From Euprymna scolopes (lineage: Eukaryota), in the NCBI GenBank assembly GCA_053919585.1, contig CM132798.1: a stretch of DNA of 64,000 bases. The stretch is one strand, 5' to 3'. Under the pieces are notes generated by a model, which was given only the letters and a program-made list of their open reading frames with translations, had not been told where the DNA came from and did not search any database. Positions 56,504 through 58,040 of the stretch are shown piece after piece (positions within the stretch are counted from its first letter, which is position 1; every line of letters starts with the position of its first letter). The position numbers were made by a program, and so were the translations under genes.

Positions 56504-56875
56504 TTCTTGGCCTTTTGGACAAGATCAAAGTGTAAAAAAAAAAAAAAATGCATACACAAACACACAGACAACGGTTTATTAATTGTAAATATGGTTTTGA
56601 TTCTTAAACGCTGGGGATTTATTAGTTAGTTTAAGATCCATAGAGTGAATGAGGTATTTTGGTAAATGTTGCCAGTCAAGAGTAAGACTCCAAAGTCTAC
56701 ATTTATTACTTTTTAATCACTTTAGTCACAAAGACCCTGAACCCTTCCCCTCCCCAATTTCTTGTAGGGCCTTGTGCCTAATTTTGTTGTTTGATAATCT
56801 TTTGTTTTTTTTTGTATTTACAAAATTTTAAAAGCAATAAAATATATAAACAAGATCAAAGTGTAGTATCTGTTC
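56504..56875 (+). pseudogene. U2: U2 snRNA 5' fragments (56504-56534 followed by an A-run; 56850-56875)
   Basis: TTCTTGGCCTTTTGGACAAGATCAAAGTGTA and CAAGATCAAAGTGTAGTATCTGTTC match the conserved U2 5' end, including the GUAGUA branch-point recognition sequence. Confidence 0.85.
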
Positions 56876-57480
56876 CGGCAGATACTGCAAGCTATGACTA
56901 GCTATGACTAGCAAAGACCAGATGTGGGGGCAACCCCACATGCCTGACTTTTAACCAGCTCCCATTTCCCACCTCTCGGGAGCTGGTCCCCCCCTTTCCC
57001 TTCCCCCTCCCTTTACTCCTCACATTAAAAATTGGCCTTGTGCCTAATTTGCTCGGTGGGGGAGCAAATAAATACCATCTGTTCCGGCAGATACTGCAAG
57101 CTATGACTAGCTATGACTAGCAAAGACCAGATGTGGGGGCAACCCCACATGCCTGACCTTTAACCAGCTCCCATTTCCCACCTCTCGGGAGCTGGTCTCC
57201 TTTTTCCCTTCCCCCTCCCTTCACTCCTCACATTAAAAATCGGCCTTGTGCCTAATTTGCTCGGTGGGGGAGCAAATAAATACCATCTGTTCCGACAGAT
57301 ACTGCAAGCAAAGACCAGATGTGGGGGCAACCCCACATGCCTGACCTTTAACCAGCTCCCATTTCCCACCTCTCGGGAGCTGGTCCCCTTTTTCCCTTCC
57401 CCCTCCCTTCACTCCTCACATTAAAAATCGGCCTTGTGCCTAATTTGCTCGGTGGGGGAGCAAATAAATACCATCTGTTC
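56868..57480 (+). repeat. Three head-to-tail copies (209, 208, 188 bp) of a structured short repeat bounded by ATCTGTTC
   Basis: ATCTGTTC at 56868, 57077, 57285 and 57473; units nearly identical. Confidence 0.95.
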
Positions 57481-58040
57481 TTCAGATGCTGCACTTCATT
57501 TTCTTGTTCTCTTTCGGTGGAGGAGAAATCCTTCATAACTGAGACAATTTTTATTTTTGTACCTTTTCTCCACGTTAAAAAACGACCCTGGTGTCTAACT
57601 CTGTCCCGTGGGGAGGCATAGTAAATAGGTACATTAACAGATTCCAATCTAATTGATTTCCTTTGTCTGACATCAGACACACTGTGATCGTTTTTTTCAT
57701 ACACAAGGGATCATCACGTGTTTTTGTTGCTAGCTGCCTTGTCTATGATTCATGTGAAACGGACACGAAATTTTACTTCTATTCGGCCATCTTTTTTTTT
57801 TTTTTCTTTATTCACCCTACCCTCCCTCTTTTCTCTTACTGTTTGGACATTGTTCCATTTTTCAAAAACTTATGTCTTGTTTTGCTGTTGCCTCTCCCTT
57901 GAAGTTACTCGTATTAGTATAATTTCTGTTGCTGCAAATATTATCTTTAAATAAAAGTGAAGGAACGAAGGTGAAAAACATGTGGATCATACAATTTATT
58001 ACTTGAAACTGCATTTGCTTCTACACAGATTATTCTAATA

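What the first reader, a model, noticed from the sequence alone, without database searches (positions are those of the whole stretch)
56504..57486. Structured ~200-nt repeat multimerised inside a U2 snRNA 5' fragment: candidate U2-targeted non-autonomous retroelement
Seen: U2 sequence runs to ...GTGTAGTATCTGTTC (56875). Three near-identical units follow, each ending AAATAAATACC and separated by the U2 octamer ATCTGTTC. The last octamer continues TTCAG, whereas U2 continues TTATCAG. Upstream, a 16-bp U2 duplication ACAAGATCAAAGTGTA (56519-56534 and 56850-56865) flanks a segment that holds a decayed relative of the unit (CAAAGACC...GGCCTTGTGCCTAATTT, ~56729-56785). Established: Utopia (NeSL clade) and Keno (Tx1 clade) retrotransposons insert in this part of U2, and U2-headed SINEs (SINEU) exist. 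Inference: an ORF-less element inserting repeatedly into U2 with short TSDs, or a concatemer made by reiterative or rolling-circle reverse transcription.
Basis: partly seen in the sequence, partly recalled or inferred. Interest (0 to 1): 0.8.

Follow-up and report, generated by a model that had tools for sequence, protein, structure and literature searches.

The report
Self-stacking U2-headed SINE array
This stretch is one copy of a very abundant short retroelement family of a large mollusc-type genome that carries a piece of U2 spliceosomal RNA at its front. New copies, and their Tx1-type partner LINE, land inside that U2 piece of older copies, so units pile up head to tail.

Summary
In detail: three units of 201, 200 and 180 nt are separated by ATCTGTTC. 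A U2-like leader precedes them and a 16-bp duplication lies upstream.

This is not a U2 gene. The whole composite (56504-57632) is a retroposed element flanked by an 8-11 bp TSD. Its layout is U2-derived leader, three 'A' units, then an older 'D' unit.

The upstream "decayed relative" is a 5'-truncated 3'UTR of a LINE with APE and RT domains.

Genome-wide counts:
- 74,179 unit tails, of which 55,132 (74%) abut ATCTGTTC.
- 29,446 leader-to-unit junctions.
- About 26% of D-type leaders are occupied.
- None of 1,185 real U2 genes is occupied at this site.

A 7-kb LINE sits in real U2 genes at nt 1. Its RT is closest to Xenopus Tx1. At dispersed leaders its ..AAATACC tail joins ATCTGTTC exactly as the units do. 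One 5'-truncated copy has an 18-bp TSD there.

Best reading (about 0.7): successive target-primed insertions into the U2-derived leader. A single-event concatemer is the main rival. Local duplication is unlikely because the units share no private mutations.

It is a new variant of known kinds (SINEU, Keno). Earlier agents of this scan reported the same family on other DNA of this genome.

The parts
56493..56503 (+). Upstream copy of the TSD of the whole composite (TACATTAACAG; at least ATTAACAG, 56496-56503)
   Evidence: Same 11-mer at 57630-57640.
56504..56534 (+). U2-derived leader, first part (about U2 nt 6-36), cut off by a LINE insertion
   Evidence: Matches this genome's real U2. Rfam U2 partial hit of 20 bits. 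Blast hit to leader positions 1-31.
56535..56849 (+). 5'-truncated 3'UTR (315 bp) of the 'type-1' LINE, starting in its internal poly(A) run and ending ..AATAAAATATATAA. It is flanked by the 16-bp TSD ACAAGATCAAAGTGTA (56519-34 and 56850-65).
   Evidence: Collinear with the 3'UTRs of full or longer LINE copies in L039, L044, L054 and L055, which have the same junction to ACAAGATC.
56850..56875 (+). U2-derived leader, second part (about nt 21-46), ending in ATCTGTTC (56868-75)
56876..57076 (+). Unit 1, family A (201 nt); a subfamily with CC at 117-118 and T at 157
   Evidence: 6 differences from the A consensus, none shared with units 2 or 3.
57077..57084 (+). ATCTGTTC (U2 nt 39-46 in this genome's numbering) between units 1 and 2
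57085..57284 (+). Unit 2, family A (200 nt)
   Evidence: 1 difference from the consensus. Structured: z = -3.2.
57285..57292 (+). ATCTGTTC between units 2 and 3
57293..57472 (+). Unit 3, family A short variant (180 nt, lacking 2 x GCTATGACTA)
   Evidence: 1 private substitution plus a 20-nt length variant.
57473..57480 (+). ATCTGTTC between unit 3 and the D unit
57481..57632 (+). D unit: the older founder element body. It has a U2-like Sm-type stretch (..ACAATTTTTATTTTTGTACC..) and its own tail ..GGCATAGTAAATAGGTAC.
   Evidence: Homologous to the units at the 5' and 3' ends. D is 3'-terminal in 17 of 17 sampled arrays that contain it.
57630..57640 (+). Downstream copy of the composite's TSD

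Best explanation
Window 56504-57632 is one locus of a U2-snRNA-headed SINE superfamily with at least 10^5 units in this 5.9-Gb genome. A founder element (U2-derived leader of about 46 nt plus D body) was retroposed here, leaving an 8-11 bp TSD. Its leader then served as a landing pad. A Tx1-type LINE, which also lives in the real U2 genes and carries the same leader, nicks the bottom strand just before ATCTGTTC (U2 nt 38/39) and reverse-transcribes RNAs that end in the box-hairpin-AAATACC tail. The top strand is cut about 16-18 nt downstream. Incoming RNAs themselves carry leader sequence and a similar stretch (ATCTGTTC-YKKCAGATRCTGCA). The 5' end is therefore probably joined by homology, so only the shared octamer remains visible between units. 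Three independent A units entered this way, and a second LINE type left a 5'-truncated copy at leader nt 21/22. Shown: the anatomy, the genome-wide junction statistics, the LINEs, their junctions and their TSDs. Inferred: which LINE moves the units, homology-guided 5' joining, and the order of insertion.
For: Family and junctions. There are 74,179 tails, of which 55,132 are followed by ATCTGTTC. There are 29,446 leader-to-unit junctions. Unoccupied D-type leaders number 25,824 and occupied ones 8,894. All reversed-pattern controls gave 0.

Array architecture. In 40 sampled arrays, 32 start with the leader. D is 3'-terminal in 17 of 17 arrays that contain it. 25 of 36 multi-unit arrays mix families A, B and C.

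LINEs. 7-kb elements interrupt the 764-bp real U2 array. ORF2 has APE, RT and zf-RVT domains, and ORF1 has zf-CCHC. The RT model is closest to Xenopus Tx1: 34% identity against 26-27% for L1. Both LINE types begin directly after U2 nt 1-46. The type-2 leader carries a TC variant that the resident gene lacks, so the leader travels with the element.

Type-2 tail. The tail GGGGCCGATACGACTAAATACC joins ATCGCTTC (U2 nt 1) in the U2 arrays and ATCTGTTC at dispersed sites, about half of 59 hits each. Downstream of it lie D, C+D, an A-like unit or another LINE. The SINE tail and the type-2 tail fold alike: box, hairpin, single-stranded AAAUACC.

DNA-level insertion. L064 is a 5'-truncated type-2 copy with an 18-bp TSD, ATCTGTTCTTCAGATGCT, inside a D element. 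The window's type-1 fragment has a 16-bp TSD.

Stepwise growth. D is more diverged than the A/B/C units of the same array in 11 of 15 arrays (p = 0.01). Divergence rises toward the 3' end (rho = 0.21, p = 0.016). The paralogous loci L021 and L023 read H-A-B-D and H-A-D. Their flanks differ by 0.57% but their A units by 2.0%.

Window units. The three units share no private variants.
Against: No LINE with the units' exact 43-nt tail was found. Type 1 shares 17 nt of the box; type 2 shares the architecture, the AAATACC end and the junction.

No real U2 gene is occupied at nt 38/39, although the site and 10 nt on each side are identical. With 26% occupancy of D leaders, about 300 occupied genes would be expected. 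An endonuclease that reads only U2 sequence does not explain this.

The age gradient is weak, and the sample was chosen through well-preserved tails.

The paralogue test rests on 4 mismatches against about 1 expected (p about 0.03).

Copy number at this locus was not checked with long reads.

RNA evidence is uninformative: only contigs were available, and the unique flank is not covered.
Confidence: 0.7

Rival explanations
1. Single-event concatemer. During one retrotransposition the reverse transcriptase copies one SINE RNA up to the leader (nt 39), jumps to the 3' end of another SINE RNA, and repeats, so a multi-unit array is inserted at once.
For: The whole composite has a single TSD. Arrays mix families, as expected from a pool of RNAs. 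No real U2 gene is hit at nt 39, which an RNA-level mechanism explains directly. Junctions of tail|5'-truncated unit (tail|AACCC..) exist.
Against: It does not explain why D is always the last unit or why D is older. It does not explain the L021/L023 difference after a locus duplication. LINE copies use the same junction, and one truncated copy has an 18-bp TSD there. The window's own 16-bp TSD shows that leaders are hit as DNA.
Confidence: 0.17
2. Local tandem duplication, unequal crossing-over, or an assembly artefact of a single unit.
For: Tandem, near-identical units. A true satellite of this family exists elsewhere: L061, 20 x 166 bp of a 5'-truncated B unit without an octamer.
Against: The three window units share no private mutation, belong to different A subtypes and differ in length. 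25 of 36 sampled multi-unit arrays interleave different families. Tens of thousands of arrays share the same junction.
Confidence: 0.05
3. A genuine U2 gene, or a U2 pseudogene derived from a gene, hit by a U2-specific element such as Utopia or Keno in the strict sense.
For: The junction coincides with the published Keno/Utopia 3' junction, where U2 resumes at about nt 39 (PMC4640811).
Against: Real U2 genes lie in 764-bp arrays elsewhere and read ..CTGTTCTTATCAGCTTAAT. Here the leader starts at about nt 6, differs at nt 10-11 and 21-22, continues as D, and the composite has its own TSD. No RLE endonuclease is present.
Confidence: 0.03
4. A ribozyme-bearing tandem repeat (retrozyme-like) or a cluster of functional small RNA genes that yields unit-length or circular RNA.
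For: Units are significantly structured. C and D bodies keep a U2-like Sm-type stretch. Family sequence is abundant in RNA libraries.
Against: No ribozyme or other Rfam family matches, even at E <= 10. Junction forms seen in RNA contigs also exist as DNA. TSDs, 5' truncations and LINE-type tails point to LINE-dependent retroposition.
Confidence: 0.03

Closest known systems
SINEU (U1/U2 snRNA-headed SINEs of crocodilians; Kojima 2015, PMC4494074)
   Same: The head is copied from the 5' part of U2 snRNA and there is no internal pol III promoter. It is tied to Tx1-type LINEs. D and C bodies look like internally deleted U2, as SINEU-3 does. Tandem copies 'sandwiching a TSD' through sequential insertion are described for SINEU-3.
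   Different: SINEU has a poly(A) tail, a few thousand copies, and targets a Mariner transposon. No partner sharing the tail was found for SINEU-1, and the family is reported only from crocodilians. Here the tail is a box-hairpin-AAATACC without poly(A), there are at least 10^5 units, the target is the element's own U2 head, and partner LINEs carry the same head. Sequence homology to SINEU was not tested.
Keno (Tx1-clade, APE-type LINEs specific for U2 genes; Kojima & Fujiwara 2004, as cited in PMC4640811 and PMC4494074)
   Same: The LINE has APE and RT domains, its RT is closest to Tx1, and it sits inside U2 genes. At dispersed leaders its 3' junction is the published one (U2 resumes at about nt 39).
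   Different: In the real U2 genes of this genome the junctions are at nt 1 (type 2) and about nt 23 (type 1), not nt 39. The elements carry a 46-nt U2 leader. Most copies of the system sit outside U2 genes. Keno had not been reported from molluscs in the papers read.
Utopia (NeSL-group, RLE-type U2-targeting LINEs; PMC4640811)
   Same: The same U2 site. Tandem insertions in U2 are noted for Utopia-1_NVit. Crocodilian Utopia families have weakened specificity for U2-like sequences.
   Different: Utopia encodes a restriction-like endonuclease. The LINEs here encode an APE-type endonuclease.
Non-autonomous parasites of site-specific LINEs, e.g. R2-derived SIDEs in 28S rDNA (from my own knowledge, not checked here)
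   Same: Short ORF-less elements keep the LINE's 3' end and its insertion site, and are co-transcribed with the target.
   Different: Those stay confined to the host gene array. Here the element carries a copy of the target with it, so the target multiplies across the genome.

Membership tests
SINEU (snRNA-headed SINE) | 5' head derived from U1 or U2 snRNA | tested here: met
   The leader matches this genome's U2 nt ~6-46, including the lineage-specific GATCAAAGTG. Rfam gives a partial U2 hit.
SINEU (snRNA-headed SINE) | Short, non-coding, dispersed, flanked by TSDs | tested here: met
   Units are 150-220 nt. The window composite has a TSD of 8-11 bp. A stand-alone leader+A lies at a non-U2 site in L030. 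Tens of thousands of loci.
SINEU (snRNA-headed SINE) | 3' poly(A) tail (all SINEU groups, PMC4494074) | tested here: not met
   Tails end ..GAGCAAATAAATACC (A/B/C) or ..GTAAATAGGTAC (D), with no poly(A).
SINEU (snRNA-headed SINE) | Sequence relationship to the crocodilian SINEU families | not testable with these tools
   No Repbase/Dfam sequences were available.
Keno / Tx1-clade U2-targeting LINE (the partner) | APE-type endonuclease plus RT of the Tx1 clade | tested here: inconclusive
   Exo_endo_phos, RVT_1 and zf-RVT domains are present. The best Swiss-Prot structural and sequence match of the RT is Xenopus Tx1: 34% identity against 26-27% for L1. No RT phylogeny with clade references was made.
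Keno / Tx1-clade U2-targeting LINE (the partner) | Inserted specifically in U2 snRNA genes | tested here: met
   Full-length copies interrupt the real U2 array. About half of 59 type-2 tails abut U2 nt 1 in U2 arrays.
Keno / Tx1-clade U2-targeting LINE (the partner) | 3' junction where U2 resumes at about nt 39 | tested here: inconclusive
   Met at dispersed U2-derived leaders. Not met in any real U2 gene.
Utopia (NeSL, RLE) | Restriction-like endonuclease C-terminal to the RT | tested here: not met
   ORF2 has an N-terminal APE domain, and Pfam finds no RLE.
Retrozyme / ribozyme-bearing tandem repeat | Self-cleaving ribozyme motif in each unit | tested here: not met
   Rfam search of 56350-57700 at E <= 10 gave no ribozyme family above noise.
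Satellite DNA by local amplification | Neighbouring units share private variants and a uniform period | tested here: not met
   The window units differ in length and share no private variant. Most arrays are mixed. L061 does meet this feature.

The most novel reading that the evidence does not exclude
The U2-derived leader is a portable homing cassette. It is at once the landing site of the partner LINE's endonuclease (ATC..TTC, present at U2 nt 1 and nt 39) and a homology arm that lets any transcript containing a unit be pasted in without a promoter of its own. Each insertion therefore makes a new target. This would explain where snRNA 'heads' of SINEs come from: they are target flanks carried along from LINEs resident in snRNA genes, not products of template switching to free snRNA. 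It would also explain how promoter-less SINEs reach 10^5 copies while the real U2 genes stay unoccupied at that site.
Probability: 0.4. Interest if true: 0.75.

Novelty: new variant of a known kind. Interest (0 to 1): 0.6.

Why it matters
According to the papers I could read, snRNA-headed SINEs are published only from crocodilians. Their origin, transcription and partner LINE were left open there (PMC4494074).

Here the same kind of element is at least ten times more abundant, in a mollusc-type genome. It sits next to full-length LINEs that live in the U2 genes and carry the same 46-nt U2 leader. That makes two things directly testable: the origin of the head (a target flank carried along) and the cause of the tandem stacking (the element carries its own target).

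It is also a caution for annotation. A recent cuttlefish genome paper reports "almost no SINEs" in decapodiform cephalopods (PMC13218726). If this genome belongs to that group, which I could not verify, at least 0.4% of it is a SINE family that standard classifiers leave unclassified.

The finding adds a case in which a site-specific LINE system escaped a low-copy target by multiplying the target itself.

Tried and rejected
- A DNA search of the genome with the unit found nothing, not even the unit itself, because very common words are skipped. Pattern counts were used instead.
- The Rfam U2 family search of the genome failed twice. It was replaced by a conserved U2 pattern.
A census of everything inserted in the real U2 arrays, and a search for SINE master copies behind U2 promoters, could therefore not be done.
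- A single-sequence AlphaFold model of the RT was useless (pLDDT 35). It was redone with an alignment.
- The homologue search gave no names.
- Relatives of the LINE in other assemblies (L068, L069) show no U2 sequence, so U2 association is not shown outside this genome.
- RNA: only Logan contigs were available. Family words are abundant in RNA libraries, but the locus's unique flank has no cover, and every junction form also exists as DNA. Transcription, RNA ends and circles cannot be judged.
- Ribozyme or retrozyme, a real U2 gene, Utopia and simple tandem duplication were considered and rejected for the reasons given under the rival explanations.
- Complex prediction was not used because no protein-protein claim is made.

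Full report
**1. What is in the window**

- ..CAAAGTGTAGT-ATCTGTTC ends at 56875.
- Three units follow: 56876-57076, 57085-57284 and 57293-57472. Each ends AAATAAATACC and each is followed by ATCTGTTC.
- The last octamer continues TTCAGATGCTGCAC.
- The 16-mer ACAAGATCAAAGTGTA stands at 56519-34 and 56850-65.
- TRF sees the array.
- The tail 21-mer occurs 6 times in the window against 0.01 expected.
- A unit folds better than all 200 shuffles (z = -3.2).

- The 152 nt after the last octamer (57481-57632) are a fourth, diverged relative of the units ('D'). It aligns with them at the 5' end (CAGATRCTGCA) and over the whole tail.
- The composite 56504-57632 is flanked by TACATTAACAG (56493-503 and 57630-640), so it was retroposed into this place.
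- Rfam finds no U2 gene here, only a 20-bit partial hit on the first 35 nt, and no ribozyme.

**2. It is one copy of a huge family**

The genome holds 5.9 Gb in 925 contigs. Run labels point to a mollusc, but organism names are coded.

| Pattern (up to 2 mismatches; reversed controls all 0) | Count |
|---|---|
| 43-nt unit tail | 74,179 |
| Tail followed by ATCTGTTC | 55,132 (74%) |
| Leader (GATCAAAGTGTAGT-ATCTGTTC) followed by a unit | 29,446 |
| Leader followed by a D-type body | 25,824 |
| Unit tail + octamer followed by a D-type body | 8,894 |

So there are about 2.5 units per leader, and about 26% of D-type elements are occupied.

I annotated 35 regions (219 kb), giving 40 usable arrays and 214 units.
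- The usual layout is leader, then (A/B/C)n, then D, then unique flank.
- 32 of 40 arrays start with the leader.
- D is 3'-terminal in all 17 arrays that have it.
- 25 of 36 multi-unit arrays interleave different families (A, B, C).
- Stand-alone leader+A copies at non-U2 sites exist (L030).

**3. Real U2 genes and the LINEs**

A conserved U2 pattern finds 1,185 uninterrupted U2 genes, mostly in a 764-bp tandem array at the end of contig C9. Their sequence shares the lineage-specific GATCAAAGTG with the SINE leader.

Gaps of about 8 kb in that array are full-length LINEs.
- ORF1 has zf-CCHC. ORF2 has APE, RT and zf-RVT domains.
- The two types are 72% identical in ORF2.
- An alignment-based model of the RT (pLDDT 82) matches Xenopus Tx1 best in Swiss-Prot. 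Identity is 34%, against 26-27% for L1 ORF2.
- Both types begin immediately after U2 nt 1-46 (..GTATCTGTTC|TCAGTGC..).
- In type 2 this leader carries TC at nt 21-22 where the resident gene has CT. The leader is therefore part of the element.
- Type 1 ends ..GGCCTTGTGCCTAATTTTGTTG..AATAAAAT.. and joins U2 at about nt 23.
- Type 2 ends in the box GGCCTTTGTGCCTAAGTTG, a long hairpin and GACTAAATACC, and joins U2 nt 1.

The window segment 56535-56849 is collinear with the last 315 nt of type-1 3'UTRs. It starts in their internal poly(A) run. Longer copies show the same junction ..ATATATAA|ACAAGATC in L044, L054, L055 and L028. Its 16-bp TSD shows that the SINE leader is hit as DNA.

**4. The link between units and LINE**

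The SINE tail has the same architecture as the type-2 tail: box, hairpin, then seven single-stranded nucleotides ending AAAUACC. It shares 17 identical box nucleotides with type 1.

A pattern for the type-2 tail followed by either ATCGCTTC or ATCTGTTC gave 59 hits.
- About half are tail|ATCGCTTC, all in the U2 arrays.
- About half are tail|ATCTGTTC, spread over many chromosomes.

In six fetched cases the octamer is followed by D, C+D, an A-like unit or another LINE. The LINE thus uses exactly the units' junction.

L064 is a 5'-truncated type-2 copy with an 18-bp TSD, ATCTGTTCTTCAGATGCT, inside a D element. This places the bottom-strand nick at GTAGT|ATCTGTTC and the top-strand nick about 18 nt downstream.

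The two sites used by type 2 both read ATC..TTCT (nt 1-9 and nt 39-47). Dispersed leaders start at about nt 6-9 and lack the first site.

Published Keno and Utopia junctions have U2 resuming at nt 39 (PMC4640811).

**5. Stepwise growth or one-shot concatemer?**

Four lines favour stepwise growth.
- D is more diverged from its consensus than the A/B/C units of the same array in 11 of 15 arrays (Wilcoxon p = 0.01). Among A/B/C units, divergence rises weakly toward the 3' end (rho = 0.21, p = 0.016). Tails were excluded from these measures.
- The paralogous loci L021 (H-A-B-D) and L023 (H-A-D) differ by 0.57% in 2.3 kb of flank and 0.7% in D, but by 2.0% in A. This fits independent A insertions after the duplication. 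It also shows that at least B was gained or lost at the DNA level.
- The TSD-bearing truncated LINEs (section 4).
- The three window units share no private mutation. Unit 1 carries subfamily variants seen elsewhere, unit 2 has 1 difference, and unit 3 is a length variant.

Two lines count against a purely endonuclease-driven picture.
- None of the 1,185 real U2 genes has anything joined at nt 38/39, although the sequence is identical for 10 nt on each side.
- Junctions of tail|5'-truncated unit occur, and a true 166-bp satellite of such a junction exists (L061).

Template switching may therefore contribute. I put it at about 0.17.

**6. Mechanism proposed**

*Shown:* the leader is the landing site for at least three element types, each with its own preferred nick.
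- Type 2 and the A/B/C units: nt 38/39.
- Type 1: nt 21/22.
- A further element: nt 26/27.

Real TSDs are 16-18 bp.

*Inferred:* because incoming RNAs themselves contain leader or octamer sequence and a similar downstream stretch, the cDNA end can anneal to the cut target. Full-length insertions then show no leader duplication, only the invariant octamer. This would also let read-through transcripts serve as templates, which removes the need for an internal promoter.

*Unexplained:*
- The source of RNAs that start at the leader. Dispersed copies begin at about U2 nt 6-9, which implies a start near the U2 transcription start, yet no master copy in a U2 gene was seen.
- The sparing of nt 39 in real U2 genes.

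**7. Comparison and novelty**

The closest known kinds are SINEU and Keno.
- SINEU has a U2 head, Tx1 dependence and tandem copies around a TSD, but it is known only from crocodilians, is polyadenylated and targets a Mariner element.
- Keno is a Tx1-clade, APE-type LINE in U2 genes.
- Utopia is excluded because the endonuclease type differs.

New features here:
- the host group;
- the scale (at least 10^5 units, at least 0.4% of the genome);
- a non-poly(A) stringent-type tail;
- partner LINEs that carry the same leader;
- dual use of nt 1 in genes and nt 39 in dispersed leaders;
- self-targeting that multiplies the target.

I found no paper describing this.

Earlier agents of this scan reported the same family on other windows of this genome. 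I re-tested their main claims independently.

**8. RNA**

Only contig-level runs were available. Family sequence is abundant in poly(A)-selected, oligo-dT and rRNA-depleted libraries, and in at least three organisms. The unique flank of this locus is not covered, and all junction forms also exist as DNA. No conclusion on expression, RNA ends or circles is possible.

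Noticed in passing
window 40337-40453 (+), 53952-54071 (-), 56387-56486 (-): Three weak Rfam 5S_rRNA hits (46-52 bits). They stay alignable for about 200 nt beyond the 5S part, so they are copies of a 5S-rRNA-headed SINE family of about 300 nt, not 5S genes. The U2-headed composite lies 17 bp from the head of the third copy, on the opposite strand. 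Words of this family are also abundant in RNA-library contigs.
   Followed up: partly
window 13038-13460 (-): Two B-like units (tails at 13057 and 13306, spacing 249) with no ATCTGTTC between them; an older or differently joined array of the same superfamily.
   Followed up: no
window 2657-2736 (+) and 45341-45362 (-): Decayed leader and D fragments (..TAGTATCTGTTC with 3 mismatches upstream), i.e. older copies of the founder element.
   Followed up: no
L007, L049, L050, L058 (contig C1): A further element type ending ..AACATGAATAAAAGATTTAATA is joined to the leader at TCAAAGTG (U2 nt 27) in four independent arrays. Different retroelement families each have their own preferred nick inside the U2-derived leader.
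   Followed up: no
L061 (C1:21221000-21226800): At least 20 tandem copies of a 166-bp, 5'-truncated B unit joined tail|AACCCCACAT, with no octamer and 98% identity: a satellite born from one SINE junction.
   Followed up: partly
L069 (another assembly, ENA ERZ25071366): LINEs 60% identical in ORF2 stand in LINE-LINE tandem. They keep the 3' box (GGCCATGTGCCACAATTT) but have no U2 sequence nearby. The box is conserved across the LINE lineage; the U2 association may not be.
   Followed up: partly
L029 (C1:6357896-6360938), inside a unit: An inverted insertion of a different SINE whose tail (GGCCTTGTGCCACATTTTGCT..AGCAAATAAATATC) has the same box-hairpin-AAATA design, so several SINE families seem to use this LINE lineage.
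   Followed up: no
G000 C9:168.86-169.15 Mb; C9:149.5 Mb; C713, C433, C759: Real U2 genes form 764-bp tandem arrays in both orientations, interrupted every few tens of kb by 7-kb LINEs. In type-2 cases the intact U2 gene lies directly downstream of the LINE, and the U2 promoter flank lies directly upstream of the LINE's own leader.
   Followed up: partly
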